A stretch of DNA of 64,000 nucleotides from Octopus bimaculoides. Its lineage: Eukaryota. Each line of letters opens with the position of its first letter. Position 1 is the first letter of the stretch. The DNA lies in the NCBI RefSeq assembly GCF_001194135.2, contig NC_068982.1, positions 33,388,948 to 33,452,947 of the forward strand, read 5' to 3'. Shown in pieces: positions 14,321 to 63,332 of the stretch. A program made the position numbers and the translations under genes. A model generated the notes under the pieces. That model ran no database searches. It was not told the DNA's origin and saw nothing but the letters and a program-made list of their open reading frames with translations.

Positions 14321-14328
14321 CTAAACTT
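14321..14328 (-). CDS. Coding part of terminal exon J ((G)AA GTT TAG = E V stop)
   Basis: Acceptor catgaccttttcag|AAGTTTAG about 190 nt past microexon I. Phase 1 gives the C-terminus EEDPEV*. Confidence 0.5.
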
Positions 14329-14520
14329 CTGAAAAGGTCATGAGTACTGCCCTCACTCATTCAAATAAACCATAACATTTAAGAGGGGGGAAAAAGGACA
14401 TTATCAAAGCACTAACATATATTTGCTTTCGGTAGGTGGTGGTAACCCAGACAGGAGAAGGACAATTATGTTTCATAATGACTAGTTCAGTGCCTCACTA
14501 TTCTGATTTCAAACCCTTAC

Positions 14521-14545
14521 CTGGATCTTCTTCACTTTTCACTTT
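14521..14545 (-). CDS. Coding microexon I (25 nt; KVKSEEDP|E)
   Basis: Acceptor ctgacactcattttattaaactcag|A with a branch-like CTGAC; strong donor CCAG|GTAAGG. Phase 0 to 1. Confidence 0.65.
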
Positions 14546-16383
14546 CTGAGTTTAATAAAATGAGTGTCAGTTCAATGTTTTATTAAAATAATGTTTATCA
14601 AATTTTCCATGAAGTGTTGGTTTCTTTTTTACAGGGCATAAATGTCTTACATTTCCAAGGAGGGGACTGTGACTTGCTATATAAAATAGTAGTGTATGTA
14701 ACAAAAGAAAAACTTCAACATATGTCACCAAGTTATTTTAAGAAAGGCTTACATTTTCCTTTGTTAATATGGATTTCTTAAATAGATACAAATAATAGGG
14801 AGTAAAATTTAAACATTGTATAGTATTTGTACTTTTTCCAACATATGAATGTTATATAATAAATGATAGAAACTGGTTTCAATAAAGAACCCAAACTGGT
14901 TAAAATATTTTTTTCTTTAATAATATAATCACATTAAATGGAAGGCAATGCACAGGACCTTCTCAGAGACTAGCTGAAGGAAAGGAAGAGGTTATTCTTC
15001 AACCAGAGACCTTGCTGAATGCTTTCCATAAAGTGGACTCCACTAAAGTCCTCCAAAGAACAGGTAGTGGTGTAAACTGGGTGAGAGATTAAGCATATGG
15101 CTCTAACTGAGAACTGATTTCTAGTTCTACAGTTCATGCCACACCATTCCTTAAAATGTTAAAGCCAATAGTTTATAAATTACACCAAGTGATAAGGTGA
15201 TTAAGCAGCTGTTTCAGTCATTATCATATTAATTTATTTCCAAGAAATTTTTATCTAAGATTTATACTTCTTTTTAAACAGTGTGATTTGAATACAACTT
15301 ATCTTTTAAAATAAAAGGAGAAACATTTTCGACACAACATAAGCAATGAGACAGTAACAGACTGCAAGCTTCCTAAAAGCACCAGTGGGTGGAGGTGGTC
15401 ATGGGAAGATAAATGGGGCAAAACAGGGTAAAGGTGAGGTACAGTCCCTGTGGCAGTGGCCGGAATGATAGCAACAAAAGGGTAATGGTGAGGAATTTGA
15501 AAGGGTAAGCAAAGAAATGAATGAACCTGCAGCTGGTAATGACAAGTACAGAAGAGCAGAGTGGATGCATACAAGCAAGTGCAGTTGCTGCTGGGGCATG
15601 AGGCAGAGGGTGACAACAGCAGCAAATGTAGGGGTACTCACAAGCAGAGGGACGAGTTGATGGTGGCAGAATATCAAGAACTCATCAACCGTATAGTGTC
15701 TCAAGGCATATGTCCACATCAACAAAGACAAAATAGAAGAGTGCAATGAAAATTACCCTTCCATGTCAACTTTGTCTCAGCTCAAAACTGACGTGCTATT
15801 AGTGTCTAACCCTCACATTAGCCCCTATTACATAGACCTTCTGATCAAAGATGCTCCAGCCTTCATCATCCCCTTTGTCATTTTATATTCTGGAGCACAA
15901 TGTGACCCAGGCTACATTGTCTAATGTGTCCTTATTTTTGTGTGGTCAGTAGGGTATGATTTTTTTTTTTTTTAAAGAAACTCCGCTATTTCTGACTGAT
16001 CAAGCAACAACTTAAAGGAAAACTGCATAAATAGACTAAGATGAACTGCACATTGGTAACAGATGCATGCAATTTAATGAACATATGCCTGAATGTAGCT
16101 CATACTAAAGAGGATTGATTTTGAGGCAGCAGGTTGATATTTCAAAAATTAAACGTTTTGTGTCTGTGTGTAAATATATGTGTGTGTGTGTGTGTGTGCG
16201 TACGTATGTGCATGTGAGTATATATGTGCATCGAGGTAGATATAGCGTTGCATAGACATACAAATAACAAAATCTGTATAAATATGTATTGGAAAGCCTA
16301 TTTTCTGCAAAAGTATGAATATATCAATAATAACAACAAAAAAATTGTAACATAATAACTGAGTATTCATATCTCTCTCTCTA

Positions 16384-16423
<40 letters not shown>

Positions 16424-16479
16424 TCTCTCTCTCTCTATCTCGGGTGGGGGAGATAGTAGAAAAGTAATAACAAAGTGCA

Positions 16480-16870
16480 TATGTTGCTATTTAGCTCATG
16501 TCAGCCCACAATGAGCAGTACTATGATCAAAGACATTCCAGCTGTGGCCTTCCTGTCTTTATTCAAAACCCACATTATCAGTGTCCTTTTCTCTTTTAAG
16601 ACAGTAAGGTATAATGGGAGAGAATTTCACTGCTATTTCTAGCAGTTTGAGCAACCTTGTTCATTCTCAAATTGGTTCATGTTCCTTCATGTTACTGCTG
16701 TTTAACTTCAAATCAGCCCCAATGAGGTATAACTATGATCAGAAGTTTTCCAACCATGACCATCTCACCCTTTTTAAAGGTATTTAGAACTATTCTGTCT
16801 GAAGAGTATTTTCCTAAAGCAGCAGTGCATGATTTGGAGGGAGTTTGGCTGCTATTTCTAGCAGATTCAG
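16480..16870 (-). repeat. Two tandem diverged copies of a dispersed repeat (core GCTAGAAATAGCAGCCAAATCTCCCTCAAATCAC..., (CAA)n tail)
   Basis: Related pieces at about 6955-7010, 11115-11350, 15830-15960, 30625-30770, 30985-31110, 56650-56740 and 58905-59030. Confidence 0.55.
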
Positions 16871-16928
16871 TGACTGGCTCAAAAATGTGTATGTTGTGTA
16901 TGTATGTATGCACATATATATATATATA

Positions 16929-16965
<37 letters not shown>

Positions 16966-17845
16966 NNNNNNNNNNNNNNNNNNNNNNNNNNNNNNNNNNN
17001 NNNNNNNNNNNNNNNNNNNNNNNNNNNNNNNNNNNNNNNNNNNNNNNNNNNNNNNNNNNNNNNNNNNNNNNNNNNNNNNNNNNNNNNNNNNNNNNNNNNN
17101 NNNNNNNNNNNNNNNNNNNNNNNNNNNNNNNNNNNNNNNNNNNNNNNNNNNNNNNNNNNNNNNNNNNNNNNNNNNNNNNNNNNNNNNNNNNNNNNNNNNN
17201 NNNNNNNNNNNNNNNNNNNNNNNNNNNNNNNNNNNNNNNNNNNNNNNNNNNNNNNNNNNNNNNNNNNNNNNNNNNNNNNNNNNNNNNNNNNNNNNNNNNN
17301 NNNNNNNNNNNNNNNNNNNNNNNNNNNNNNNNNNNNNNNNNNNNNNNNNNNNNNNNNNNNNNNNNNNNNNNNNNNNNNNNNNNNNNNNNNNNNNNNNNNN
17401 NNNNNNNNNNNNNNNNNNNNNNNNNNNNNNNNNNNNNNNNNNNNNNNNNNNNNNNNNNNNNNNNNNNNNNNNNNNNNNNNNNNNNNNNNNNNNNNNNNNN
17501 NNNNNNNNNNNNNNNNNNNNNNNNNNNNNNNNNNNNNNNNNNNNNNNNNNNNNNNNNNNNNNNNNNNNNNNNNNNNNNNNNNNNNNNNNNNNNNNNNNNN
17601 NNNNNNNNNNNNNNNNNNNNNNNNNNNNNNNNNNNNNNNNNNNNNNNNNNNNNNNNNNNNNNNNNNNNNNNNNNNNNNNNNNNNNNNNNNNNNNNNNNNN
17701 NNNNNNNNNNNNNNNNNNNNNNNNNNNNNNNNNNNNNNNNNNNNNNNNNNNNNNNNNNNNNNNNNNNNNNNNNNNNNNNNNNNNNNNNNNNNNNNNNNNN
17801 NNNNNNNNNNNNNNNNNNNNNNNNNNNNNNNNNNNNNNNNNNNNN
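16966..17845. other. Assembly gap (N run)
   Basis: 880 N, preceded by (TA)n. Confidence 1.
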
Positions 17846-17888
17846 GGTATGTTAAAAACAAAAAATAAAGTAAATTACATATTTTAAA

Positions 17889-18101
17889 TATTCTTTTCTA
17901 CTCTAGGAACAAGGCCCAAAATTTTTGGGGAGGAGCCAGTCGATTGGATCAGCCCCAGCACACAACTGGTACTTTATTGACCCTGAACAAGTAAAAGGTA
18001 AAGTTGACCTCAGCAGAATTTGAACTCAGAACGTAAAGACAGACGAAATACCGCTAAGCATTTTGCCCAGCGTGCTAACGTTTCTGCCAGCTCGGCGCCT
18101 T
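17889..18101 (-). mobile_element. tRNA-derived SINE family C
   Basis: Minus head AAGGCGCCGAGCTGGCAGAAACGTTAGCACG..TTCTGAGTTCAAATTC, central CTTTTAC/CTTTCATCC..GTACCAG block and tail GTAGAAAAGAAT. Confidence 0.8.
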
Positions 18102-19206
18102 GCATACTTTAAATATTAATCGAGTTACTTTAGTGGCTTACACAATTTTATCATACAGTCAAATACCAAGCATTCTAATTGGACAGAACAAAGTATACAA
18201 TTGAATAATAACTTCGAGCCTGCATTCTATCAACCCTGGTGTATTATGTCCTGTACAGTAAAAATATCACTGTTACTTCAAATCTCACTTCTTTGCTAGT
18301 GATACTACTTGGCACTCCTCCTTAACAGTACAAGTATCATCAAACCCTATAGCATTCAGGTTATACTGTCAAATGTAATGTTTTTGTTTATTCAATTTCT
18401 TTTGAATGAACCATGTATATATCTTGTAGCTTTGTAATTTTGATAATGTGATTGTTTATTTTAACAACATTACAGGGGGTGGTGTGAGAGGTTGGATCTG
18501 GCTAGTTCAAATATCAATCAGGTAGAATATTTGGGCCGGCTACAGCCTGTTTAAATGCCAAGTGTATAAGCTATCTATGTATACTGCTCTTATTTCATCA
18601 AATCTCGCCCAAAGTACTTCATTGGTCTGGAATGGATTGATGCAGGACTAAACAACAAAAATCTCAGAGATTACACCTATTTTTCAATCAATTAAAACCC
18701 TCAAAGTTGTTACAATTTCAAGGCCAACAACTAATTTTGTGGTGACTATATCAACATCATTATTTTAATGTCCACTTTTCTTATGTTCATATGGGTGGAA
18801 CAGAATTTGGTGAGGGTGATTTTCTTCAAACAAATATCTTCTTGTTGCCAACCCTGACCTGTTTCAAAGTAAATAAAAAATTTCTCCATAGATGGACATG
18901 TTTCCATTACAAGATTGGAAATGAAAGATACCGCCTATGATGATGGCACTCATCTACAATAATCAAGTAATGTCAAGTGATATCAGATATCCTCTTATGT
19001 ATGTATTAACCGGATATTAGAGGGATGTGAGTTCGATCCTCATGGCTGGCTGCCGACCAATTTTTCTGCTTTTAAAAAGGAAAAAGGATTTTATCCTTTA
19101 TATCTATACTGTTCAGTATCTATGCATTGAATAAAATTTATCTTTCTACTTGTTCTACCATACATTTCAGCACTTCGAAAAACAAACTTATTTGTTTACA
19201 TACGGC

Positions 19207-19256
<50 letters not shown>

Positions 19257-19307
19257 TAACTGTGTAATAGTGAATATAAAGGGCACTCCATCCAATGAGT
19301 GTTCAAT

Positions 19308-19449
19308 ATTACTAAACGTTTCAACTACCGTGCTAATAGTTTCCCGTACATGCGTACATTCATCAGGCAATTGACGCCTGATGAATGAACGCATGTACGG
19401 GAAGCTATTAATAGCGCGATAAGTACATGTAGTCGAAACGTTTAGTAAT
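19308..19449. repeat. 142-bp imperfect palindrome (inverted repeat) with a 7-nt loop
   Basis: Left arm 19308-19368 pairs with right arm 19376-19449. The loop-proximal ~35 bp are nearly perfect; the right arm has a ~12-nt insertion. Confidence 0.85.
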
Positions 19450-19480
19450 GTGTGTGTGTGTGCATGCACACACACACACA

Positions 19481-19884
19481 AAATGGATGCTTTTCAGTTT
19501 CCATCTACTAAATCCTACCACAAGGGTTTGATTTAGCTAAGTTACCAACTTTTTCAAGTCATACAGACTCATAAGGGATGGTTTCCCAGTTTCCATGGCA
19601 TATATTATATTTCCCACCTGGACAGGACTCGGATCCGTTGCAGGATTACTGATTTTTGCCAGCTGAGTGGACTAAATCAACATGAAATGAAGTGTTTTGC
19701 TCAAGAACACAATGCGTCACCTGGTCCAGGACACCCTAACCATTAAAGCCACCTGTCTCCACAAGGCTTTGATTGGCTCAGGGCTATACTTGAAGACACT
19801 TACCCAAACTGCCACACAATGGGACTGAACCTAGAATCAAGTGATTGGGAAGCAAGCTTCTAAACTACACAGCCATACTTGTGC
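19481..19884 (-). mobile_element. Nested or composite SINE fragments (family A halves interrupted by another SINE-like piece)
   Basis: Family A blocks at 19481-19535 and 19755-19884 flank a different tRNA-head-like segment. Confidence 0.5.
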
Positions 19885-19902
19885 CAATACACACACACAC
19901 AG

Positions 19903-19942
<40 letters not shown>

Positions 19943-20186: not shown

Positions 20187-20219
<33 letters not shown>

Positions 20220-21154
20220 CTCACATACATAAACACACACTAGATGACAGCTATAAATAGGCCCATGTGATGAACATTAATGCACAAACATGCTCCTTAC
20301 TCACTCTTTCTCTTTCTCTCTCTCTCATTCTCTCTCTCTCTCTCTCTCTCTCCCTTCCATTCATACCACTACTACAACAGCTTCTGATTGTTTGAACTAG
20401 AAAGTCATGGATTACTTTTATCTTAGGTCAGCAAATGACCCTGTCTTGTATTCTTTCATTATCCTTACTATGTCTCTAATTCCTACACTACATGCTTTTC
20501 TCATTTCTTATCCTTTTCTAGAACTCTTTTACTGCTGACATCACCCCCAACAGGCATCAAACCACCAGAAGCTGATAGTTGGGGCCCTGGCTAATCTTAG
20601 ACCACCCCAAACACATATATTCCCAACTCACTCATTTCTCCTCTTTTTGTCACCCATATTGTATCTCTACCACTTTAAGATTTCACACTAACAACTATGC
20701 CTCGTTCTTCCTCTTCAGAATGGCAATGTTCTAGAATTCTCTCATAGCACATGTTTCTCCTGCAACTGTTAGCTTGCAACTATTTAAGAACATTAACTGC
20801 ATCAATCTCACCTGTGTGAGAGGGCCTGCAAAAGCCTTGGGTACACCAGTCTCTAAACCAGAGGTTCTCAACCATTTTTTACCTATAGACTCCTTTGTTT
20901 ACTATTTTATTCTGGTGGATTCCCACAGCCATTCGATGTTTAAAAACTAATTTATAAATACTTCTTTCAAAATTCCTATGTTGTTATTCATTCATTCACT
21001 TGTTTAGGTTGAACTATGTAAAATGCTAGAGAAAGAAACCTCAGTTTTTTTTAGGGGTTTTTCTTTAATATATACATTTAAATCAAAACCTTTCATGGAC
21101 ACTTAAAATAATACAGTGGATGCTCTAATAACTATTTTGTTAACATGAACTTGT

Positions 21155-21296
21155 TAACACTCTCGGAGTGGTTGGCGTTAGGAAGGGCATCCAGCTGTAG
21201 AAACTCTGTCAGATCAGATTGGAGCCTAGTGCAGCCATCTGATTCACCAGTCCTCAGTCAAATCGTCCAACCCATGCTAGCATGGAAAGCAGATGT
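21155..21296 (+). mobile_element. RTE-type tail fragment
   Basis: Same UTR core GAGTGGTTGGCGTTAGGAAGGGCATCCAGCTGTAG...CCATGCTAGCATGGAAAGC. Confidence 0.75.
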
Positions 21297-21526
21297 GTAG
21301 TACTTATATAGTCTGATATTTTCAGGATTCAACAAATATTCCTGATGGACTTGCAGCCTAACTATAATTCAAATAGTCTTTGGAGCTGACCTCTATGAAA
21401 ACAAAAATATAATTACATTTGTATATGTATATATTTACATTTGTATATATAATTACATTTGCATACTATTGATTTGAAAATAATGAAGTCAGCAGATGAA
21501 AGTGTATGTAAGCACGAGTACCTTTC

Positions 21527-21683: not shown

Positions 21684-21747
21684 ATATATATATAAAGATG
21701 TGTATGTGTGTGTATATATATATAAAGACGTGTGTGTGTATGTGTGC

Positions 21748-24964: not shown

Positions 24965-25376
24965 GATGCCAGTGCCACCTGACTGGTCCCATGCTGGTGG
25001 CACATAAAAAGCACCATTCAAGTGTGGCTATTGCCAGTACTGCCTGACTGGCTTCCGTGCCAGTGGCACATAAAAAGCACCATTCAAGCATGGGTCATTG
25101 CCAGTGCTGCCTGACTGGCTCCCGTGCCGGTGGCACATAAAAAGCACCATTCAAGTGTGGTCAATGCTAGTACCTCCTGACTGGCCCTCATGCCGGTGGC
25201 ACATAAAAAGTACTCACTACATTCCCAGTGGTTGGCATTAGGAAGGGCATCCAGCTGCAGAAATCTTGCCAGATCAGATTGGAGCTTGGTACAGCCTTCT
25301 GGCTTGCCAGTCCTCAATCAAACCGACCAACCCATACCAGTATGGAAAGTGGGTGCTAAACGACAATGATGATGAT
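24965..25376 (+). mobile_element. RTE-type 3' UTR fragment with four ~66-bp tandem units
   Basis: Units GCCAGT..CTGACTGG..GGTGGCACATAAAAAGCACCATTCAAG start at about 24968, 25033, 25100 and 25166, followed by the UTR core and (GAT)n. Confidence 0.75.
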
Positions 25377-25700: not shown

Positions 25701-26368
25701 CCCGTCAGAGTGTAAGTATCTTGAGAGAAAAGCTGAACATTAGAAGCATCAGTTGTGGTGTACAAGAGAGACGATTGCGCTGGTATGGACATGTGGTGAG
25801 AATGGATGAGGNNNNNNNNNNNNNNNNNNNNNNNNNNNNNNNNNNNNNNNNNNNNNNNNNNNNNNNNNNNNNNNNNNNNNNNNNNNNNNNNNNNNNNNNN
25901 NNNNNNNNNNNNNNNNNNNNNNNNNNNNNNNNNNNNNNNNNNNNNNNNNNNNNNNNNNNNNNNNNNNNNNNNNNNNNNNNNNNNNNNNNNNNNNNNNNNN
26001 NNNNNNNNNNNNNNNNNNNNNNNNNNNNNNNNNNNNNNNNNNNNNNNNNNNNNNNNNNNNNNNNNNNNNNNNNNNNNNNNNNNNNNNNNNNNNNNNNNNN
26101 NNNNNNNNNNNNNNNNNNNNNNNNNNNNTAAAAGACACCATTTCGAGCATGGCCATTGCCAGTATCGCCTGACTGGCCTTCGTGCAGGTGACACATAAAA
26201 GCACTTACTACACTCTCTGAGTGGTTGGCGTTAGGAAGGGCATCCAGCTGTAGAAACTCTGCCAAATTTAGATTGGAGCCTGGTGTTGCCATCCGGTTTC
26301 ACCAGTCCTCAGTCAAATCGTCCAACCCATGCTAGCATGGAAAGCGGACGTTAAACGATGATGATGAT
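25701..26368 (+). mobile_element. Young 5'-truncated RTE LINE insertion (RT C-terminus, gap, 3' UTR, (GAT)n tail)
   Basis: LREKLNIRSISCGVQERRLRWYGHVVRMDE is a typical RTE C-terminal motif. The 3' UTR retains CpG and ends GGACGTTAAACGATGATGATG. Confidence 0.85.
25812..26128. other. Assembly gap (N run) inside the RTE element
   Basis: 317 N. Confidence 1.
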
Positions 26369-27368: not shown

Positions 27369-27477
27369 CTTCTTAAATTTTTTCCGAGTACTCCCAAATT
27401 TGGCTAGAACATTGGATGATTTTTTCTTTTTTTCTTCATTTTTATCTTTATCCTTTTCATCTTTGAGGCTAGAATAA
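27369..27477 (-). CDS. Coding exon H (109 nt, or 100 nt from a second acceptor; YSSLKDEKDKDKNEEKKKKSSNVLAKFGSTRKKFKK)
   Basis: Acceptor gtattatttttgtattattctag|T, with a second ttattctag 9 nt downstream; donor AAGAAG|GTAAAT. Phase 2 to 0. Inside ORF 27219-27491. Confidence 0.8.
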
Positions 27478-29460: not shown

Positions 29461-29670
29461 CTCTTTACTTGTTTCAGTCATCTGACTGCGGCCATGCTGG
29501 AGCACCGCCTTTAGTCGAGCAAATCGACCCCAGGACTTATTCTTTGTAAGCCTGGTACTTATTCTATCGGTCTCTTTTGCCGAACCGCTAAGTTACAGGG
29601 ACATAAACACACCAACATCGGTTGTCAAGCGATGTTGGGGGGACGAACACAGACACACAAACATACACAC

Positions 29671-29755
<85 letters not shown>

Positions 29756-29917
29756 TATACGACAGACTTCTTTCAGTTTCCGTCTACCAAATCCACTCAC
29801 AAGGCTTTGGTCGGCCCGAGGCTATAGTAGAAGACACTTGCCCAAGGTGCCACGTAGTGGGACTGAACCCGGAACCATGTGGTTGGTAAACAAGCTACTT
29901 ACCACACAGCCACTCCT
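29461..29917 (-). mobile_element. Family A SINE, full length, young
   Basis: Same structure as 9975-10333 with CpGs retained. Confidence 0.85.
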
Positions 29918-32899
29918 AGAAATTATAAGGTAAAACTGAGCTCCATGCAAACAAACAGTTGCCGTAAAGTCTTTGCACCTAAACTAGCTTTAGGTATCTT
30001 TTTGTATTAAAATGTACAAAATTCTTAAATTTCATTAACGCTATTATTTACCTGCTGGAAATTAACATAGAGTGGAAATTCTTCGCCAATTCCTTTTTAT
30101 CACTGTTTTTACGAGGCTCTACTGCTTCTTTATTGATTTCTGCAACCTCATCTATTTCTTCAAACTCCTGTTGCCGTCGAAATTTTCTGGAAAATTTTTA
30201 AGAATATTTTTTTTTATATTCTTACACATATGTGTATAGATGTGTATGTGTAAATTATACACATACACATGTGCATATACAGGCTAACACATACACACAT
30301 ACATATAGTATCAAACAGTATTGTGAAATGTAGCAAACAAATAAATGACGTTTATGAAATGTGGACACCAAGATATAAAATTACAAAAGCTGCAGCAAAA
30401 CCAGTGACTACAATAATAATTGATAGGAAAGAAACTTTAAATCTATTCTAGAACAAAATTCAATCCTGCAAGAAATGAAATGTTACAGGAATGTTCTTCA
30501 AAACCCTAGAATGGAGAAAAGGAAAATCATTAAAAAAAAAAAAAAAATAATTAATAGCATTTTTCTATTTTATTGAATATTTGGTTGGTAAAATACCAAC
30601 AAGAATACTTCTAGTGAGTAGCCCAACATGCTAGAAATAACAGTTGAACGTTTCTAAATCACAATGTAGTATCTTACAAAATAGCACATATATTTGCTGG
30701 TCTTCAATATTTAAAAAGGCAGGATGTTCACAATTGGAATGCTGTTGATCATAGGCCTATACTACTAATACTGAACCTTCTACCTTTTGAGTATCCGATT
30801 AACACAGATATATGTCCACAAACTTCTATATCTCTTTGTAGGCTTCAAAATATAACAAGAAATTATGTCGACATAATTCTAAAACTGAAGAACTCTATAT
30901 TTCCCAAAGCAAATGTTCCATAGGTAAAGATAATGGAGCAATTAAAGATGAACTAATCAGGATACTACTACATAATCACTAAGTTGCTTGGAAATAATAG
31001 CTAAATCTCCTTCAAATCATACCCTAGCATCTTAAATAGGGAAATAATGCCTCAGATAATACAGTCCTCTTTAGTCATAAAAGAGATGTTGGATTGCCTT
31101 TGATCACAGATCTGTTTCCTCTGAGAAGACTTTGGGTTAAAGAAAATCTACCAATTATGGATGTTGTAAAGTTTGTTGTGTTTTTTTCCCCACTAAAATA
31201 TATATAACGTTAATTATAAAACTTTTAAAGTATATTAATTGATAAAATTATTCATAAAAAAACAATGTTATTATTTCAAAATAGTGTTTCTTCTTTATAT
31301 TGAGTATTCACTCTTGGAAAAAGATCTTTGTTGTAAAGAAATAAACCTAGTGAATGCCAGTTTTAAGCCTCTAGCACTTAAACCATAAATTTTAGTAAAT
31401 GTAATAACACTTATAATTGCATGAAATATACTTGATAATGCAACAGAAGTAAGTCAATTTGAAACCAAACTAGAAATCTCCCAGATACCAACCTGACACT
31501 GAACTTTTAATATCATGACAACCACAGATCTGTATTTTTAAATAATTACAAAAAATAATTGCTTTCTTCCTCAATACAAGAAAAAAGTATGTCTGTGAGA
31601 AAGTTCTTTGACAGGAATAAATTTAGATTCACATATACAAAGGTTTGAATTTTGATAGACTTGATTCTATTACTGTAAAAAACTACCTGCAGAGTATTTT
31701 CCAATTACCAAAATTACTACCAAAATGTGTGTGAGTGTGTTTAAGAGATAAAGGAAAAAAGGAGAGACAGAATATGTTTCCCTTTGTGGGAAATATTGGA
31801 GAATACATTATAGGTACATTTCTGTTTATCCTTACTATTCTAGGAAAGGGTTACATTACCCTAAATATCAGGACTAATTAGATATTTCTACAGTATAATT
31901 CTATAGTACTTGTAAATGTCATTATTTATACTTAATGCTTAATCTGCATTCCTATAGCCTTCTATGACACACTGATTTTATATATATATAGCTTTCATTA
32001 AAACCAGAGATGAAAGGAATTTTTATTTCTTGTAACATGTTTTAGAACAACAAAAAATGAGGAATCTTAGCTGAATTTTTAAAAAAATAAAACAGAAAAA
32101 AGTAAATAAATTTCAAGACATGAAAGAACTATTCAAAATGACATTTACAGATAATGATTGGTTTTCTGTTTTAAAATAATTTACAAACATCAGTGAATAA
32201 TTAAGAAGGCACAACAAATATAAAAAAAAGTGATAAAAATCAGAGTTGTGGGACTTTACGCAGATCAGAATGGAGACAGAAAGTAAAACACTAACAACGG
32301 ATCAGATATACAAAAAAGTGTACAGGAGAATTAGGGGGAGGGGAATTTTCTCAATAATTAAAATGTTAGAAACTGTACATATTCTTTTTCTTTCTTTACA
32401 GAATAAAATGCAATGAAGACTGCCAGGCAATGAATAACAACAGCAAACAGATTAAAGCATTGTGTATCAAAACAGAATAGTTAGTAAAACAAACAAAAAA
32501 AGGAGATGTTAATACTAGTAATTCTTTTTCAGAGCAAAGCAAAGTACATAGATCTACAAATAGTAACATGTAAACATTGGGTTGAAAAACCTTTCTGGAT
32601 AGAAAAAGTTGAAGGCTGCCTACGCCCAATATTCACATGCTATTATTTATAGCCTTATGTGCTTTCAGATCCACTGTTTCAAAAAAGAATTATTTCATGT
32701 TCCCTTGAAAGTTTATAAAATCTTGTGGCATCAACAATATAAATGCTAGTGCTTGAAAAATTGGAAATTAAATGATAAATGCAATGTTATCAAATTGCCA
32801 TTATTAATACTGTCAGGATTGTTATTAGGAAAATGTATGTGTTTGAGATAAGAGTTCTTGCTTTATAGTTTGGAGAAAGGAGTTTTGTCTATGGCATTT

Positions 32900-39095: not shown

Positions 39096-39125
39096 TCATT
39101 ATCCTCAAGCTTTTGGGTATAATAT
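39096..39125 (-). CDS. Coding mini-exon G (30 nt, frame-preserving; YYTQKLEDN|D)
   Basis: Acceptor tttctcttgtaacctttcag|A; donor ATGA|GTGAGT. Phase 2 to 2. Confidence 0.75.
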
Positions 39126-41659: not shown

Positions 41660-41793
41660 NNNNNNNNNNNNNNNNNNNNNNNNNNNNNNNNNNNNNNNNN
41701 NNNNNNNNNNNNNNNNNNNNNNNNNNNNNNNNNNNNNNNNNNNNNNNNNNNNNNNNNNNNNNNNNNNNNNNNNNNNNNNNNNNNNNNNNNNNN
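41660..41793. other. Assembly gap (N run)
   Basis: 134 N between (TA)n and (TG)n. Confidence 1.
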
Positions 41794-41971
41794 TGTGTGT
41801 GTGTGGAAAATAAAACAGGGTAGAAAATGCTTAAATAATTTTATCACGAAGATCATTTTAGTACCAATTTCAGTCTTTGTGACATTTTCAGCTTAGAGTA
41901 AGCCACAAAAAACAAATTGTGGAAAAAATAAATGGTACGTTTTTTCCCAAAAATATTTCTATTGTTTTCAA

Positions 41972-42950
41972 ATGCATGAAAGTATGGAGAGGCTTAAAGA
42001 ATTGCAAACACTTATAAATGGGCTTGATCTAAGCATTCTTTACATCCTCATTAAAAAATCTAACAACGAAAAACAAACAGGTATATACTATAAGCCCACC
42101 GACTCCAAGCAATATCTACTGCTCAACTCATGCGACCCCAGATACACTAGAATGAATATCCCTTTCAACCTAGCAAAAAGTATTTGTATTATAGTTTCTA
42201 ATACAAGCACCAGAGACACACAACTTTATGAACTAAAGGATACACTCATTACCAAGAACTACCCACCATCACTAAATGATATAGGCTTTCAATGTGCCCT
42301 ACAACTCAACATCCATAAACTCAGACAACCCAAATTAAGGAAGGATTTACAAGCAAAAGCCCTACCATACATCTCCACACACAACCCTCTTAACAATGAA
42401 GCCTTCAACACCATCCTCCAGAACATTCCTCTACTAAAAAGGGACCACAGAATAAATGTAATCCTCCAAACGCACACCATCATAAAGAGCAAGAGACAAC
42501 CCAAGTCTATGAAAAGTCTCTTAACACAAGCCCAAGTACTCTCAACAACAATACGAAAGCTGGAAGTAAATAAATGCAGAAGACCTAACTGTGATATATG
42601 TGTTAACCTAATTGAGAGATCAGAGTTCTCTTTCAAACAGGGTCAACATTTTACAATGAAAAACAACTACATGTGTGTTTCAGAGAACCTAATATATGTA
42701 TTAACTTGCCCTGGTATTGAGAGAAATACAAAGGCCAAACCAAAAACAGTCTACATCAATCCCAGATTAAAATTCAGAAATACAGAAAAATAGCATTCAG
42801 TGAACACATCGACATTTGCGCCACTAATAAACAACCCAGCTTCAGAATTTTTCCCCTCTATAAATTCAGGGACGATGCAGCCTGTAGTCAGCGCATTAGC
42901 AAAGAATCATATTTTAATCATAAAATATAAACCCCTTTTGAATGCGTCCA
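41972..42950 (+). mobile_element. Penelope-like element fragment: RT C-terminus/thumb, linker and GIY-YIG endonuclease (5'-truncated, frameshifted near 42715)
   Basis: The 273-aa ORF has IYYKPTDSKQYL...NIPFNLAKSIC, KCRRPNCDIC and NLIYVLTCPG. The shifted frame continues FSEHIDIC...FRIFPLYKF...KE. This order is typical of PLE RT-thumb plus GIY-YIG. Confidence 0.85.
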
Positions 42951-44967: not shown

Positions 44968-45001
44968 TGTTTGTGTTGTCTTTTCATCTGTGGTATTACC
45001 C
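44968..45001 (-). CDS. Coding mini-exon F (34 nt; GVIPQMKRQHK|Q)
   Basis: Acceptor atatttaactttcag|G; donor AACA|GTATGT. Phase 1 to 2, the shift needed between exons E and G/H. Confidence 0.75.
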
Positions 45002-46681: not shown

Positions 46682-46841
46682 CCTTGGAACCATCTCTGGC
46701 AGCAGGAAGACATGATGTTGATGAGGATTTAGCAAAGTTCACACTAGGTGTAGCAGGAAAAGGGTAATTAGATACAAATACAGAGTCTGGGGAGTCTACT
46801 GCATCAGGAGAAGGCAAAGATGCAGAGTTGTTTTCCATAAT
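46682..46841 (-). CDS. Coding exon E (160 nt; IMENNSASLPSPDAVDSPDSVFVSNYPFPATPSVNFAKSSSTSCLPAARDGSK)
   Basis: Acceptor ttactttcatattttgtag|A; donor AAGG|GTAACT. Phase 0 to 1, no stop. Below the ORF-track length cutoff. Confidence 0.85.
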
Positions 46842-49231: not shown

Positions 49232-49437
49232 ACTCTTTTACTCTTTTACTTGTTTCAGTCATTTGACTGGGGCCATGCTGGAGCACCACCTTTAGTCGAG
49301 CAAATCGACCCCAGGACTTATTCTTTGTAAGCCTAGTACTTATTTTATCGATCTCTTTTGCCGAACCGCTAAGTTACGGGGACGTAAACACACCAGCATC
49401 GGTTGTCAAGCGATGTTGGGGGGACAAACACAGACAC

Positions 49438-49499
<62 letters not shown>

Positions 49500-49655
49500 G
49501 ATGGGCTTCTTTCTGTTTCCGTCTACCAAATCCACTCACAAGACTTTGGTCGGCCCGAGGCTATAGCAGAAGACGCTTGCCTAAGGTGCCAAGCAGTGGG
49601 ACTGAACCCGGAACCATGTGGTTGGTAAGCAAGCTACTTACCACACAGCTACTCC
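49232..49655 (-). mobile_element. Family A SINE, full length, young
   Basis: High identity to 29461-29917. Confidence 0.85.
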
Positions 49656-50179
49656 AGCACCTTTGGTAAAAAATTTTTTAAATAATTAATAACAATAAGG
49701 AATGATTTCAGATCATAGCTTATCATAGGTACAACCAATTAACTGTATCCTAATATGCAAATATTACTAACTGAATAAAAGGTTCTGCTGTATTTTTCAT
49801 CATACAAATTGATACAGTTTATAGTGTAAACTTTTGAACATCATCATAATCTTTCCAAATCCAGTAGCATTTCACATGGAATTTTTGGTCTTTCAAGGTT
49901 GTTAGGGTGTATAAATCAACCTACCTATCTTGGCTGTAGATTTTGGTGTATGCCACAAAATACAGTAATTTCAAAGTCAATATAAAAAAGTGCAGAAAAT
50001 GTTAAATGATAAGGTTCACAACTACATCTCAAACTGATATATTTCTTTATATTTTCCAGGTAATACATTTAATTTGATTAAATGTATTACTCCCCTTATC
50101 TTTAGGGAAAATGCATAATCTTTCAATAGAAGAGATGATTTACTTCCAATCTGCTACAGAAACTTATTCAGCATTAAAA

Positions 50180-51086: not shown

Positions 51087-51298
51087 GCCAGTACCACCTG
51101 ACTGGCCCTCATGCCAGTGACACGTAAAATCACCCACTACACTCAGAGTGGTTGGAGTTATGGAGGGCATCCAGCTGTAGAATGCCAAATCAGATTGGAG
51201 CCTGATGCAGCCTTCTAGCTCGCCAGTCCTGAGTCAAACCGTCCAACCCATGCCAGCATGGAAAGCGGATGTTAACCGACGACGACGATGATGATGAT
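51087..51298 (+). mobile_element. RTE-type tail fragment
   Basis: Same UTR core with a (GAC)n/(GAT)n tail. Confidence 0.75.
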
Positions 51299-51674: not shown

Positions 51675-51810
51675 ATCATCATCATCATCATCGTTTAACG
51701 TCCGCTTTCCATGCTAGCATGGGTTGGACGATTTGACTGAGGACTGGTGAAACCGGATGGCAACACCAGGCTCCAATCTAAATTTGGCAGAGTTTCTACA
51801 GCTGGATGCA
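51675..51810 (-). mobile_element. RTE-type tail fragment (inverted, young)
   Basis: Near-exact reverse complement of part of 26230-26368. Confidence 0.8.
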
Positions 51811-52146: not shown

Positions 52147-52217
52147 CTTTCGGTAGTCAAACATAGCAGTTAAAGGCCAACTTGGTGGACGTTTATTATC
52201 AGTATATGCAGATTGAC
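52147..52217 (-). CDS. Coding exon D (71 nt; GQSAYTDNKRPPSWPLTAMFDYRK)
   Basis: Acceptor tttaatttgattacag|GT; donor CGAAAG|GTAATA. Phase 1 to 0. Confidence 0.85.
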
Positions 52218-57400: not shown

Positions 57401-58225
57401 TTGGATATAAAAATAGCAAAACTGAAAAGAGGCAAAAAGAAACTTTGCTAGCACTCACATTAAGGACAAGAGACAAATTTCTATTCACTTTTGCTCAACC
57501 ACATGTAAATGGAAATAAGCTACTGTTTGTAAACCTTGATAGCAATAACTTCATGAGTAGTAGAGATCAAATGAATCAGATAATGAATTATTAGGCAATT
57601 ATTAGACTATGTAATAAGTGGTGACAAGTGCTGTGAATGCAATTTTAGCACCAAATTTTAAGGGGCTCAAAAGCAATGTGACTATATGTTTTTCTGAGCA
57701 GATGTTACAATGCAACTGAGGGGAGGCTATAATAAATAAAAATAATAAGTAACTGCTGAAAGGAAGGCAAAAGTTTGCAGATGAGATATTCTCTGAATTT
57801 TTCCAATCCCCACAAAATAGGAAAATCCAATGTTTGCAAGAGACTGTGCCAAGAAAGCCATGACCAGAAAAGGAAAGCACTCAGTGGACAACCAATTGAA
57901 AAAACTTTCCAATGTGCATTCTGGAACTTTCCATGATAGAAATGTTTCTGTATATATATATAAATTAATTTTTGTTAAATATGTTATTTCAAATTTACTT
58001 CATTTCCATTTCATTTTTAAAATGATATTTACCTGACAAATTCAGCAGAACTATATGAGTAATTTTTTTGTATTAATGAATCATTATTATGTGTGTAAGT
58101 GCATGTGAATTTATTCCATGTTATAGCTTTCAGCAATTACGCTGATAAATCCCAGTATTTCTGGCTATTTACCTATTTATGTGCGCTCGTGTTCAAATAA
58201 AAATCCTACAATGTGCACAATTCTT

Positions 58226-58263
<38 letters not shown>

Positions 58264-59086
58264 TGCGTATGCGTGTGTGCATGCGTATGTGCACGCGCGC
58301 ACATGTATTTCCCAGCAAAATATAAATAATTCATTTTACATTTTTGGAACAAAAAATTTTAGTAAGTTTACATTTCATTGTGCTTGCTTCTAAATACAGT
58401 AGTTCCAAGACAAAATTTATGCCATAAATTTTATACAAGAATCTTTTTTTTAATAACTTCTATTCCAAATGCCAAATTCATATAATAATAAACAAAAATA
58501 TTATTTTTGTTTCAGAAAACCAAACAAAGTTCGCAAATATTTTAGAATGTAAATGAAGCTCATAAAGATGTATTTTAGTTAGAAATATAATAAAAAGACA
58601 TTTCTATAAAGCAAAATACAACGGCATAATTGCACCCATACTTTGGTGAGACATGTTTATATATATAACCTAGAAGAGAAACTATTACTGTGTGACTAAT
58701 CCACACCTCTATGCAGATAGGCACAGAGGTACAATTGTACATGTACAAGAGTTCTTGTTAACGACACACAAGATATTTCATTAATTTCAAACCCGACCTT
58801 CCACTAACAAACATACAGGACTCATCAATAACATCTCTAAACCTGCTAGACACAACAACCAGACTTCTCTCAGAGCACATTTCACTAATTTTTTTTTTTT
58901 TAAATCATGATATGCTGGATAATGTAATTCTAGATACATCAAGACAACTCAAATTAAGACAGGATAGAAGCAGCTGGAATAACTAATACTATGTCAGCTT
59001 AATCAAGCCCAATTTAAGGCACAACAACAACAACTACACACAATTATTATGTAGAACATATAACATTTTTGGGGTTTTTTTTTTAC

Positions 59087-59259
59087 CATAAGAAGAATAA
59101 GCATCTCCGGAACTGATGCTCCTCTGGTGTCCCTGAATGGCATCTGATGGCATTGTGCTTAAGTTCATCATTGATTGACTTGGCGTTGGGTTCTCTCTGG
59201 CATCATGAAAGGAGTCTTCATCAGATTCCTCTGCTCCAGTTAGGCTATTCAAACTATGG
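59087..59259 (-). CDS. Coding exon C (173 nt; HSLNSLTGAEESDEDSFHDARENPTPSQS...GHQRSISSGDAYSSY), carrying the FFAT-like motif
   Basis: Acceptor ttttttgtttctag|C; donor TATG|GTAAAA. Phase 2 to 1, in frame with exons B and D. Confidence 0.9.
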
Positions 59260-61318
59260 CTAGAAACAAAAAAACAAAATGATTATGATAGTGGGGTTGT
59301 TTTGTTTTTTCTTTACCAAGGACAACAAATCAACTACATCAACAACTTACAACCTCATGTAGCTTTTAATGTGTACATTTAGTTTTTAGATATGTACTTT
59401 ATTCATGTAGGAAAAGGCTTCAAACTAAAATCTCAATTTTTCTTTCATCTTAAGACTGCAAACAAGCTTGAGTGTTGTCTTCATTTTTTATCATACTGAC
59501 CCTAGGACTTTGTCTGGGACATTTTCTTTGTGTTGATCTCTCTTATAAGGACCAAATGATAATGCCAACTTTTGCATAAAGGACCTTAATTCAAAGGAAA
59601 TTCAATACTACAGAGTATTTTTGTTTTAAATGCTGATTTACTTTAACCTTTTTGTTATATTTCTTTTGAAATTTACTGACTTTATTTCAATTAATATTGA
59701 AAATAATGAAGGATTACTTGAATTAATGTTTTTCGTTGCTATTAAGACGTGTTTGGCACATAAATTAAAATACAATTTTGATGGTAGGTTTTAGAACTAA
59801 GGACCATCTCAAGCAGGTTGGTATCAAAAGGGTTAACCATTTCATGTCAGTGCATGCACACACACACACACACACACATTCATACACACCCATACATGCA
59901 AGCATACACTTTATTCTTTTACAGGTTTCAGTCATTGGACTACAGCAATGGCTATACTACTGGCTCCTACTAGCACCAGTACATAGTTCAGTCTTGTTGT
60001 AATTTTATCAATCCCTAGTTTTAAAACTGCTAGGTTATGATGGCTCACGTTCAGGTCTCTGATCCTCTCTGTTTTACTCTATAGCTTTGAGGCTTGACAC
60101 TCTCAAGGGCCTCAGGAGCCACCTGAACTCCTTTGGTATTAAGACATTTTGTGGGATTATGGACTACCATTGTTGGTTACCATGGTCAGATATTTTATCC
60201 AACCGATGACTTGAGCACAAAAACAGGGATGTGTCCTGTTGTATGATTCAGGGGCATCAAGTTAGATACACACATATACATACAAACAAACACACAATCA
60301 TACATACAAAAAAAAAACAACACACACACACAAACACAATGGGCTTCCTACAGTTCCTGTCCACAAGATTCATGCACAAGGTATTGGTTGATCTGGGGCA
60401 ATAATAGATGCTTACCAAAAGTGCTGCAGAGAAGAACTAAACCTGAAATTGCATGACTGCAAAGAGAACTTCTAAACCACATAGCCATACCTACCTCTAT
60501 CTATGACTGTGTTCATGTGTGTGTGTTTTAATAAGGACATTGCTTATGGCGTTCATAGGCCCTGTGACACCATTAAGCTTGATGAAATTAAAAACTGGAA
60601 GCCGATAACTACGGAAAAGCAAGAGAGCAGGTGGTGGGATCTCACACCATGCTCATGCCCATATTATTTTTCCAACCAAACCCCACTCTATACATGAATA
60701 ATAAAAACTACTACAAACTATTAATACACCTCATTATGTCATGATTTTATCCATACTGCATCTTGAGAAACTTGAAGTGCAACATAGCACCTGGCACCTG
60801 TGCTGGTGCCAATGCAACATGCCAATGCCCCCACCCCACTCCACCTAACCCCAGCTCATCCTAGTATACTTTAGAGGGTGATTTGGTGAATGAGCAGAGG
60901 AAAATATTGAGAGGTCTATTTAGCTTTGTCTTACCAAGAACTTGACACCTTCTCTAATGTTGGTACCACAAAACAAAAAAAAGGACCAAATACATAGTGT
61001 AAAATTGAGAGTAAACAAGTGAAAAAAATTATAAGGTTAAGGAGTTTCTTTAGTCCTGTTATACCAAGGACTTGGTAACCTCTCCAGTGATTGTGCCAAG
61101 AGAGAATGCACCTAGTACAGCCTGTAAAGAAGTTGGCAGCTGTAAAAACCATGTTAAAATAACAAACACAAGCACCATTCTTATGACAGTAGTGGCTTCC
61201 AATAAAGAAACAGCTCAGCTGCTGAAGATTTGAAGTGCTTCAATCAACAGCCACAACAATAAAAAACATTAAGAATAATAATTCAAATACTTTTTAAAGG
61301 TTTCAGATATTGACTTAC

Positions 61319-61849
61319 CTTTTCCCACTGAGTGATGAAGCCATGGTTGACCGGATATAATTTAGGTTCCTATGGGATTTAGGGATTTCTGAATGAGTTC
61401 TTTGATGGCCACGAATTTCTTTGTGAGCCCCTGAGCCAACATGCTCCCCATATCCAGCACTTACAGGACCAGGATCAAAATCCTCTTTATCTCTGCCAGC
61501 AGCAGAAACAAATCGTCCTTCTGTGCCATGAACACATTCAGCGGTTGATTTCACTAGTTCGCTTACAGCAGATGTGAAACTGTTTTCTGTTGTAGGCGCA
61601 GTGGACACAGCCAAATTCTCAGATGAGTTACCCACAGTGACTCCATTGATGCAGATACGGACACCAGAATCATTAACATCCGCTGCACCACAGGCAGGTC
61701 CGTAGTCGTTATACAAACCAGAATTCAATAAATTTCCTGAAAGGTCCGGTGCGAAGACAGCGTCACTGTAGACAGGTTGCCGTTCAACCCCAGGAGCCAA
61801 GTCCAGCATTGATCTGTGATGAACTGTAAAGTAAGCATATGAAACCTTA
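61319..61849 (-). CDS. Coding exon B (531 nt, 177 codons; KVSYAYFTVHHRSMLDL...GHQRTHSE...MASSLSGK)
   Basis: Lies inside ORF 61315-61869. Acceptor ctgac...ttttgtgttttttttaatattcag|T with a branch-like CTGAC; donor AAAAG|GTAAGT. Phase 2 to 2. GC is visibly above the flanks. Confidence 0.9.
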
Positions 61850-62639
61850 CTGAATATTAAAAAAAACACAAAAGCGGTCAGAATACTAATGGTAAAAAGA
61901 GAAATAATAGTGTTGGTGAAGCTAGTGAAATAGCAGCAAAGGGTGAGAGTAGAGGTTTTTATGGTAATACAGATGGTATTGATAGTGTTGAATAATTATA
62001 GTCTTGGTGGTGGTTGTGACAACAACAGTTTTAAAATTATTGGCAATAGTCAGGGACAGTTTCACGTATGGGCTAATATGGGCCATGGTCTAGAGGTCCC
62101 TTTAACTCAGAAAAGCCTAAAACTTGGAGTTAAAAATTAAAAAATATATTTACAGCAATCAAGTATTTTTTTTTTTACCTGTTTGAATGTTTTTTAATAC
62201 AAAAAAAAAGTTATTTTAAAATTATTCAGCCTTCTTCTGACATATTGGGCCTTTTTACATCTAAATGTACATTTAAATGTTCATTTAAAGCCATTATATT
62301 TAACTGAGTCACTTGGAGTCTACTAAAGCCCTTTTAAGGTTTGCGGTCTCCTCAAACTGTTTGGGAGCTCTAGACTTAATGAAGCCCTCTATATTTTATA
62401 ATGTGTAGCAAAATCATAAGGGCCCCCAAAACCTATTACCTTAGGGGTCCAACTAGGTCTCAATCTGAGACCAGTGATAGTGTTAGCTGTTCTGATGATG
62501 AGGGTAATAGTGGTGAAGATGATGATATAATACTAATGATAATTGGAAGAATGACAATAAGCAGTCTCGTAGATTGTTCTTTTATGCTTCACTCACTGGA
62601 CTACAGCCATGATAAAATGGTAAAGGTCCCTTCAGTTAT

Positions 62640-62910
62640 AAATGACTATGAGATTGCACTTACAAAGTTCCCCCCCGAGACACAAGTCAGGGCAAGGTTA
62701 TTTATGGAAGACTAATAGTCACCCATGCATACCCTCTGCATACCACCAATGTTATCTAAGAGAAAGGCAAAAGTTGATACAGTTTGGTACCAGTGACATC
62801 ACAACTCATTTCTACAGCTCAAAAACACAACACACAGCCCTGTCCGGGAATCAAACTCACTACCACATGATTGTGAGCCCGACACCCTAACCATACAGTC
62901 ATGTGCCTTC
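62640..62910 (-). mobile_element. tRNA-derived SINE (another family)
   Basis: Minus head GGCACATGACTGTATGGTTAGGGTGTCGGGCTCACAATCATGTGGTAGTGAGTTTGATTCCCGG has A-box and B-box-like motifs. Confidence 0.55.
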
Positions 62911-63292
62911 ATGGACTACAGTCATGATAAGACACCTTAAAGAGTTTTAGTCATTCAAATTAATTCTGAACTAACTTTTAAAACTTGGTTCTTGTTTTAT
63001 AAGTCTCTTTTTGTTGCACAGCTATGTTACAGGGATATAAACAAATCAATAGTGGTTGCCAATGCAATAGAGACAAACACAAAGACACAAGGAATCAGTC
63101 AGCTAAGTCTTATAGTAGAAGACACTTGCCTGAGGTACTGCATAATGGGACTGAACCCAAAATCATATGGCTGTGAAGCAAACTTCTTAGCCACACACTG
63201 TGTCTGTGTCTGTTAATTAATAACAAAAAAAACCCCAGAGAAATCAATACTATTTCTTTTAATTAGAAGATTTAATTTATATTGTTACATAC

Positions 63293-63332
63293 AAGTCATC
63301 TAACAAACTATTGTCACTTCTACCATTGGCAG
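63293..63332 (-). CDS. Coding exon A of the unnamed minus-strand gene (AANGRSDNSLLDD|F). May extend to an upstream acceptor at 63467 in the same frame, adding a His-rich stretch.
   Basis: Donor GACTT|GTATGT. Pyrimidine-rich acceptor cttcttttcattcttctcaccattgaag|CT. Ends in phase 2, matching exon B. The alternative acceptor ttctttttgtcag|TC at 63467 keeps the frame open. Confidence 0.55.

What the first reader, a model, noticed from the sequence alone, without database searches (positions are those of the whole stretch)
14321..63332. Hidden ten-exon minus-strand gene whose exon phases chain into one ~390-aa frame
Seen: exons of 40, 531, 173, 71, 160, 34, 30, 109, 25 and 8 coding nt, each with AG/GT ends. 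Phases run 1-2, 2-2, 2-1, 1-0, 0-1, 1-2, 2-2, 2-0, 0-1, 1-stop with no internal stop. Nine compatible junctions over 49 kb are unlikely by chance. The product is rich in S, P, D and E with no domain I recognise. Inference: it is the disordered C-terminal tail of a larger protein whose N-terminus lies beyond 64000.
Basis: partly seen in the sequence, partly recalled or inferred. Interest (0 to 1): 0.7.

Follow-up and report, generated by a model that had tools for sequence, protein, structure and literature searches.

The report
Middle of an octopus AKAP13-like RhoGEF gene
The minus-strand exon chain is mostly real, but it is the middle of an ordinary, already annotated giant octopus gene for an AKAP13-like Rho activator, not a hidden gene or a protein's C-terminal tail.

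Summary
Spliced together, they match residues 1147-1549 of Octopus sinensis LOC115223565 isoform X6. This protein has 2646 aa, and O. vulgaris annotates the same gene as "A-kinase anchor protein 13". The first search scored E 1e-179. The corrected eight-exon model is 92.4% identical over 406 columns.

The 531-nt exon really starts 26 nt further in, at 61823. A distant cephalopod contig has the same acceptor position and phase.

All seven annotated isoforms read here continue for about 1100 aa into a C1-RhoGEF(DH)-PH module. That module is not in the sequenced part of the window.

The "unlikely by chance" argument fails. Shuffled sequence gives a median of about 5e7 phase-compatible chains for the nine shorter exon lengths.

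All five assembly gaps lie outside the supported exons, at least 1241 nt from any of them.

This is an already known, ordinary gene, so interest is low.

The parts
61319..61823 (-). Coding exon, 505 nt, phase 1 in and 2 out. It matches O. sinensis XP_036367197.1 residues 1147-1314.
   Evidence: tblastn gives 91% identity, E 2e-94. A related octopus genomic contig, L001, is 92.7% identical in the core with a 12-nt in-frame indel, against 73-78% upstream. Acceptor and donor positions are conserved in the distant contig L003.
59087..59259 (-). Coding exon, 173 nt, phase 2 in and 1 out. It matches ortholog residues 1315-1372.
   Evidence: tblastn gives 96.7% identity, E 5e-30. Splice sites are ttgtttctag| and G|gtaaaa. 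The acceptor is conserved in L002.
59193..59231 (-). FFAT-like acidic motif EESDEDSFHDARE inside exon 3. It sits in a nearly invariant block, SHSLxSLTGAxESDEDS[F/Y]HDARENPTPSQSMMNLS.
   Evidence: Regex match. The block is conserved in O. sinensis and in the distant contig protein P0003. Function is inferred only.
52147..52217 (-). Coding exon, 71 nt, phase 1 in and 0 out. In O. sinensis isoforms X9 and X10 and in the O. vulgaris protein it is skipped together with the next exon.
   Evidence: tblastn gives 81% identity with a 3-aa indel. A 68-nt ortholog with the same phases is present in L002.
46682..46841 (-). Coding exon, 160 nt, phase 0 in and 1 out. It is a cassette with the previous exon (71+160 = 231 nt, in frame).
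   Evidence: tblastn gives 87% identity, E 1e-23. Splice sites are and isoforms.
44968..45001 (-). Coding exon, 34 nt, phase 1 in and 2 out (GVIPQMKRQHKQ).
   Evidence: tblastn gives 13 of 13 identical residues. Splice sites are ctttcag| and |gtatgt.
39096..39125 (-). Coding exon, 30 nt, phase 2 in and 2 out (YYTQKLEDNE). It is a cassette exon, absent from O. sinensis isoforms X3 and X10.
   Evidence: 9 of 10 residues are identical to YFTQKLEDNE.
30052..30186 (-). Coding exon, 135 nt, phase 2 in and 2 out (KFRRQQEFEEIDEVAEINKEAVEPRKNSDKK...).
   Evidence: tblastn gives 86% identity, E 5e-17. Boundaries are ttttccag| and CAG|gtaaat. It is present in all seven isoforms read.
27369..27477 (-). 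Coding exon, 109 nt, phase 2 in and 0 out (YSSLKDEKDKDKNEEKKKKSSNVLAKFGSTRKKFKK). It is the last ortholog-supported exon in the window.
   Evidence: tblastn gives 94.7% identity. Splice sites are tattctag| and AAG|gtaaat.

Best explanation
Window 27369-61823 (minus strand) holds eight consecutive coding exons from the middle of the octopus ortholog of an Lbc-type Rho guanine-nucleotide exchange factor. The gene is LOC115223565 in O. sinensis and is annotated "A-kinase anchor protein 13" in O. vulgaris.

The eight exons encode about 406 aa. This is a mostly disordered, Ser-rich linker that lies just upstream of the C1-DH-PH catalytic module.

Shown:
- exon positions, phases and orthology;
- conservation of several boundaries in other cephalopods;
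- alternative cassette exons (71+160 nt, and 30 nt) in the sister species' annotation.

Inferred from what is known of the family:
- The full protein activates RhoA through its DH-PH tandem.
- The linker encoded here is a regulatory and docking region made of short linear motifs, phosphosites and one predicted helix. Alternative splicing changes its composition.

The N-terminal 1146 aa lie beyond window position 64000. The C1-DH-PH and coiled-coil exons lie either beyond window position 1 or, less likely, inside an assembly gap.
For: - An exhaustive HMMER search with spliced exons 2-5 found P0002 (2646 aa) at E 1.2e-179, 94% identity, as one stretch covering query 1-304 and protein 1147-1447.
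- tblastn of P0002 places residues 1147-1549 on eight collinear minus-strand segments with canonical AG/GT ends and consistent phases. The corrected translation is 375/406 identical with one 3-aa indel.
- P0002 domains are C1_1, RhoGEF and PH_16. The best solved structure is the AKAP13 DH-PH, 4d0n, at E 4e-67. ARHGEF12, ARHGEF11 and ARHGEF1 score E 1e-39 to 2e-45.
- The O. vulgaris gene spans about 460 kb, so a 64-kb window holding only part of it is expected.
- A distant contig carries the upstream exon, exon 2, exon 3 and exon 4 in the same order and strand with conserved splice positions.
- AF2 and FoldIndex indicate mostly disorder, plus a helix at residues 306-346.
Against: - No transcript data from the window's own species could be examined, so usage of each junction in this species is inferred from orthologs.
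- The species itself is not identified.
- The exons for the C1-DH-PH module were not found in the window. That this copy is a complete functional gene is therefore assumed, not shown.
- The O. sinensis and O. vulgaris proteins are themselves annotations, not experimentally characterised proteins.
Confidence: 0.94

Rival explanations
1. The transcript runs from exon 1 (63332-63293), splices from 27369 to 14545-14521, then to 14328-14321, and stops at TAG. This makes the region the C-terminal tail of the protein. It could also be a truncated isoform that lacks the GEF module.
For: The sites look acceptable on their own: ctcag|AAAGTG...CCAG|gtaagg and cttttcag|AAGTTTAG. The phases fit by construction.
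Against: - All seven annotated isoforms from two sister species continue ...RKKFKK|GKDGKEKENK... into C1-DH-PH. None ends with KVKSEEDPEV.
- 1502 equally phase-compatible pairs of a 25-nt and an 8-nt exon exist downstream of exon 8.
- Exon 1 needs the 61849 acceptor. Two species support 61823 in a different phase.
- The 26 extra nt are only 78% conserved against 92.7% for the exon core.
Confidence: 0.03
2. The whole chain is a chance product of abundant AG/GT dinucleotides in AT-rich DNA, and there is no gene.
For: Phase-compatible chains are extremely common in shuffled sequence and on the opposite strand.
Against: - Eight segments match a 2646-aa ortholog collinearly at 81-100% identity.
- Exon-specific conservation and in-frame indels occur in two other cephalopod sequences.
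- No shuffle produced a 531-nt open AG..GT segment.
Confidence: 0.005
3. The window holds a decayed paralog or pseudogene fragment of the RhoGEF gene rather than the functional ortholog.
For: The exons for C1-DH-PH are not found in the 27 kb downstream. The assembly is gapped.
Against: - All eight exons are open, with canonical splice sites and preserved phases.
- Identity to O. sinensis is 92.4% with one in-frame indel.
- Exon 2 shows 13 synonymous and 15 non-synonymous codon differences against L001, with the fewest changes at codon position 2.
- The O. vulgaris gene spans about 460 kb, so an intron longer than 27 kb is unremarkable.
Confidence: 0.02

Closest known systems
Octopus sinensis LOC115223565 (XP_036367197.1, isoform X6, 2646 aa) and Octopus vulgaris CAI9718845.1, "A-kinase anchor protein 13 isoform X4"
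   Same: The exon-by-exon collinear match covers residues 1147-1549 at 92.4% identity. The same cassette units appear: exons 4+5, and the 30-nt exon.
   Different: The window comes from another, unidentified octopus species. It has a 3-aa insertion (YTD) in exon 4 and scattered substitutions. Only about 15% of the protein is encoded in the window.
Human AKAP13 (AKAP-Lbc) and the Lbc subfamily of RhoGEFs (ARHGEF2/GEF-H1, ARHGEF18, ARHGEF28)
   Same: The octopus ortholog has the C1, DH and PH_16 arrangement. Its DH-PH is closest to the AKAP13 structure 4d0n (E 4e-67), with PH-domain matches to ARHGEF18, ARHGEF28 and ARHGEF2. Like these proteins, it has a long low-complexity region before the catalytic module.
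   Different: The linker encoded in the window has no detectable sequence similarity to anything outside cephalopods. An exhaustive search of 1.84 billion representatives found 3 hits, all cephalopod-like. The PKA-anchoring helix that defines an AKAP was not examined.
FFAT motifs (EFFDAxE preceded by an acidic tract) that bind ER VAP proteins
   Same: Exon 3 encodes EESDEDSFHDARE. It has an acidic tract, an aromatic residue at core position 2, then D-A-x-E. The distant cephalopod sequence has it as ...SYHDARE.
   Different: Core positions 1 and 3 (S and H) depart from the consensus as I recall it. No binding data exist, and I found no literature link between this RhoGEF family and VAP. This is a lead only.

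Membership tests
Ortholog of O. sinensis LOC115223565 / O. vulgaris AKAP13-like gene | Collinear, high-identity match of consecutive exons to one contiguous stretch of the protein | tested here: met
   Eight exons match residues 1147-1549 with 375/406 identical. The search with exons 2-5 alone scored E 1.2e-179.
Ortholog of O. sinensis LOC115223565 / O. vulgaris AKAP13-like gene | The rest of the gene (N-terminal 1146 aa and C-terminal about 1100 aa) is present at the same locus | not testable with these tools
   No matches in the window.
Lbc-type RhoGEF (AKAP13/ARHGEF2/18/28) | Tandem DH (RhoGEF) and PH_16-type PH domain | tested here: met
   Tested on the ortholog P0002 only: RhoGEF 92 bits, PH_16 103 bits, best PDB match AKAP13 4d0n. 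These exons are not in the window.
Lbc-type RhoGEF (AKAP13/ARHGEF2/18/28) | C1 zinc finger N-terminal to the DH domain | tested here: met
   On P0002, C1_1 scores 26.9 bits against a cut-off of 26.5, at residues 1564-1613. This begins 15 residues after the last window-encoded residue. It is not in the window.
A-kinase anchoring protein (AKAP) | Amphipathic helix that binds the PKA regulatory-subunit dimerisation/docking domain | not tested
   No tool or model for this helix was applied. The "AKAP13" name is the O. vulgaris annotator's.
FFAT-motif VAP clients | Core E-[FY]-[FY]-D-A-x-E with an upstream acidic tract | tested here: inconclusive
   The sequence is S-F-H-D-A-R-E after EESDED. By the consensus as I recall it, 5 of 7 core positions fit. 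The motif is conserved in a distant cephalopod.
FFAT-motif VAP clients | Binding to the VAP MSP domain | not testable with these tools
   This needs a pull-down or a peptide-binding assay.

The most novel reading that the evidence does not exclude
Exon 3 may carry a functional FFAT-like motif (EESDEDS[F/Y]HDARE) that is conserved across cephalopods. Such a motif would dock this Lbc-type RhoGEF onto ER-resident VAP proteins and couple RhoA activation to ER contact sites. The neighbouring cassette exons might tune this docking.
Probability: 0.12. Interest if true: 0.35.

Novelty: already known. Interest (0 to 1): 0.1.

Why it matters
It matters little biologically. This is a correctly located piece of a gene already annotated in sister species.

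Its value is methodological. A tool-free reading recovered six exact exon pairs of boundaries, including 30- and 34-nt micro-exons. Yet it gave a wrong reason (phase compatibility), wrong ends (exon 1 and the stop) and a wrong overall picture ("C-terminal tail").

The corrected exon table, with the missed 135-nt exon and the 61823 acceptor, could be used to check this species' annotation.

Tried and rejected
- The search for homologous proteins was run three times. It returned only P0001, a genomic ORF from a related octopus read set. It never returned the 94%-identical NCBI protein. Its word index evidently does not reach that protein, so its "no hits" were not taken as absence.
- Pfam on the spliced peptide and on several long ORFs found nothing.
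- The PDB sequence search with the linker found nothing.
- Rfam at gathering thresholds found nothing in the window.
- A paper search for SRR11869394, meant to name the L001 species, found 0 papers.
- The look-up of encoding contigs for P0002 reported "not on record". For the O. vulgaris protein the gene range (460 kb) was too long for DNA to be returned. No sister-species genomic alignment of the regions holding exons 1, 9 and 10 was therefore possible.
- My ad hoc splice-site scorer used thresholds that were too strict. It returned no candidates and was dropped.
It is frameshifted (19 nt of indels) and stopped in L001, and the ortholog uses 59259-59087.
- The FFAT and AKAP13 literature search gave only a false hit, "AKAP" followed by reference number 13.
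- Sensitive tblastn (E up to 1000) and regex searches found no exon for ortholog residues after 1549 or before 1147 anywhere in the window.
Full report
**The window.** It is 64 kb, 34% G+C and CpG-depleted. It is full of (TA)n and (TG)n arrays and carries five runs of N at the stated positions. It looks like octopus genomic DNA, which the homology results below confirm.

The finding lists exon lengths and phases but no coordinates. I enumerated every minus-strand segment of each length that is flanked by AG and GT and is stop-free in the stated phase.
- The 531-nt exon is unique: 61849-61319.
- Exon 1 is fixed by the finding's end coordinate: 63332-63293.
- The last "exon" is AAGTTTAG at 14328-14321. 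Its 8 nt include the stop.
- Each of the other lengths has between 5 and about 120 candidates on the strand.

**Is the chaining more than chance?** No.
- There are 5e6 on the plus strand, where no such gene is claimed.
- In 30 block-shuffled copies of the sequence, the nine lengths other than 531 give a median of 4.8e7 chains.
- Downstream of exon 8 alone, 1502 pairs of a 25-nt exon and an 8-nt terminal exon fit.
- The only intrinsically unusual item is the long open exon. No shuffle had any open 531-nt AG..GT segment. The real 226-codon open stretch exceeds the longest seen in shuffles, 169 codons.

**What the exons are.** The 531-nt exon alone hit only a genomic ORF from a related octopus read set, P0001 on contig L001.
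- In the DNA alignment the exon core is 92.7% identical with one 12-nt in-frame indel.
- The sequence upstream is 73-78% identical, with indels whose lengths are not multiples of three.

Two further candidates stood out by peptide composition and splice sites: 59259-59087 and 46841-46682. I spliced exons 2-5 and ran the exhaustive HMMER search.
- The search matched P0002 at E 1.2e-179 and 94% identity.
- The match is one continuous stretch, query 1-304 to protein 1147-1447 of 2646 residues.
- P0002 is XP_036367197.1, "uncharacterized protein LOC115223565 isoform X6" of Octopus sinensis.
- Its 90% cluster also holds O. vulgaris CAI9718845.1, "A-kinase anchor protein 13 isoform X4".
- P0002 carries C1_1 (1564-1613), RhoGEF (1752-1934) and PH_16 (1963-2080).
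- Its C1-DH-PH region is closest to the solved AKAP13 DH-PH structure 4d0n (E 4e-67). It is well ahead of ARHGEF12, ARHGEF11 and ARHGEF1, with PH matches to ARHGEF18, ARHGEF28 and ARHGEF2.
- The gene is therefore an Lbc-type RhoGEF.

**Exon map.** tblastn of P0002 on the window, with manual boundary reading, gives eight collinear minus-strand exons:

| Exon | Coordinates | Length (nt) |
|---|---|---|
| 2 | 61823-61319 | 505 |
| 3 | 59259-59087 | 173 |
| 4 | 52217-52147 | 71 |
| 5 | 46841-46682 | 160 |
| 6 | 45001-44968 | 34 |
| 7 | 39125-39096 | 30 |
| 8 | 27477-27369 | 109 |

- All eight have AG/GT ends and polypyrimidine tracts.
- Phases run 1-2, 2-1, 1-0, 0-1, 1-2, 2-2, 2-2, 2-0.
- The 406-aa translation is 375/406 identical to P0002 residues 1147-1549, with one 3-aa indel.

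**Independent support for the boundaries.** Two weaker hits of the exhaustive search, P0003 and P0004, lie 6 kb apart on one 46.8-kb contig of an ENA assembly, ERZ21867824. It comes from a more distant cephalopod-like genome and is held here as L002 and L003.
- The upstream exon (QHVKAESLQRYGSCPILD...) ends ...CCAG|gt in phase 1.
- Exon 2 begins tttcag|AT CAT CAT AAA TCA ATG. This is the same position and phase as window 61823. It ends AAAAG|GTAAGT, as in the window.
- Exon 3 has the same acceptor.
- A 68-nt exon 4 (…RPPSWPL…) keeps the same phases.

- Exon 1 leaves in phase 2. It only works with the 61849 acceptor. With the conserved 61823 acceptor, which needs phase 1, it would shift the frame.
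- Orthologs read ...SPSASEES|VHHRS at this junction.
- At the other end, all seven isoforms read continue ...RKKFKK|GKDGKEKENKHKNAHQFVSL... into the C1 domain. None has KVKSEEDPEV.
- A sensitive tblastn (E up to 1000) and motif searches found no trace of residues after 1549 in the window.
- The O. vulgaris gene spans about 460 kb. The next exon is therefore most likely beyond window position 1. It could also sit inside one of the four gaps between 16966 and 26128, which total 1836 nt. This cannot be decided here.
- The region is not a C-terminal tail, and the stop at 14321 is unsupported.

**Gaps.** All five gaps lie outside the supported exons, 1241 nt or more from any of them.
- No frame depends on a gap's length.
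- No ortholog residue is missing across the 41660-41793 gap, which lies between the 34-nt and 30-nt exons.

**Nature of the encoded segment.**
- Composition is 14.5% Ser, with K, E, D, A and P at 6-8% each.
- There is no Pfam family and no PDB relative.
- AlphaFold2 with a shallow 5-row alignment gives mean pLDDT 39.6, and 367 of 406 residues fall below 50. The one modestly confident helix, at residues 306-346, spans the 34-, 30- and 135-nt exons.
- A crude FoldIndex is negative in 66% of 51-aa windows.
- These results fit a largely disordered linker, but both methods are weak.
- Conservation against the distant contig is concentrated in short islands: MLDLAP, SGVRI-INGVTV, HKE-xGHxR and STMAS. 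There is also a nearly invariant block in exon 3 that contains an FFAT-like EESDEDS[F/Y]HDARE.

**Isoforms.** In O. sinensis, isoforms X9 and X10 and the O. vulgaris protein skip exons 4+5 (231 nt). Isoforms X3 and X10 skip the 30-nt exon. These exons are annotated cassette exons in the sister species.

**Mechanism (inferred from the family).** The full protein would activate RhoA through its DH-PH tandem. The C1 domain and the long N-terminal region would serve localisation and scaffolding. The window-encoded linker would be a regulatory or docking segment whose content is varied by cassette splicing. None of this is tested here.

**Verdict.** This is a real gene, but an ordinary and already annotated one.

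Noticed in passing
It is present in all seven sister-species isoforms read.
   Followed up: yes
window 59193-59231 (-), within exon 3: An FFAT-like acidic motif, EESDEDSFHDARE, lies in a block that is nearly invariant between octopuses and a distant cephalopod-like contig (…ADESDEDSYHDARENPTPSQSMMNLS). It could be a VAP/ER docking site. I found no literature link.
   Followed up: partly
window 52147-52217, 46682-46841 and 39096-39125 (-): These exons correspond to cassette units in the O. sinensis annotation. Exons 4+5 are skipped together in X9, X10 and the O. vulgaris protein. The 30-nt exon is skipped in X3 and X10.
   Followed up: yes
L003 1404-1508 and 4987-5562; L002 5066-5235 and 6408-6475 (ena:ERZ21867824:ctg93266l): An assembly filed as a metagenome holds a 46.8-kb contig from a cephalopod-like genome. 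It carries four collinear orthologous exons of this gene with conserved splice phases.
   Followed up: partly
window 41897-42790 (+): A 298-codon open stretch lies inside the intron between the 34-nt and 30-nt exons, about 100 nt from the 41660-41793 gap. It has no Pfam or PDB match. From memory it looks like a decayed retroelement ORF. Several of the chance "exon" candidates are antisense to it.
   Followed up: partly
window 9968-10360, 29464-29923, 49245-49662: Three copies of a roughly 450-nt interspersed element share 83-94% identity and have an internal (TA)n array. One copy ends about 130 nt below the missed exon.
   Followed up: no
window 26240-26368 and 51681-51809; related copies at 12314-12509, 21127-21313, 25227-25373 and 51143-51289: This is a SINE-like repeat family. 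One pair is a 129-nt, 100% complementary inverted match 25 kb apart, and one arm lies 112 nt from the 25812-26128 gap. It may be a very young insertion or an assembly artefact.
   Followed up: no
window 24967-25210: A 66-nt tandem repeat of 3.7 copies at 85% identity lies between two assembly gaps.
   Followed up: no
window 1-12000: CpG observed/expected is 0.54-0.68 here, against 0.11-0.42 over the rest of the window. No coding match to the RhoGEF was found there. The cause is unknown: it could be repeat content, an unmethylated region or an internal promoter.
   Followed up: no
tool behaviour: The word-indexed protein search never returned the 94%-identical NCBI protein that the exhaustive search found at E 1e-179. 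A longer query even lost the earlier hit P0001. "No hit" from that tool is not evidence of absence for eukaryotic proteins.
   Followed up: yes
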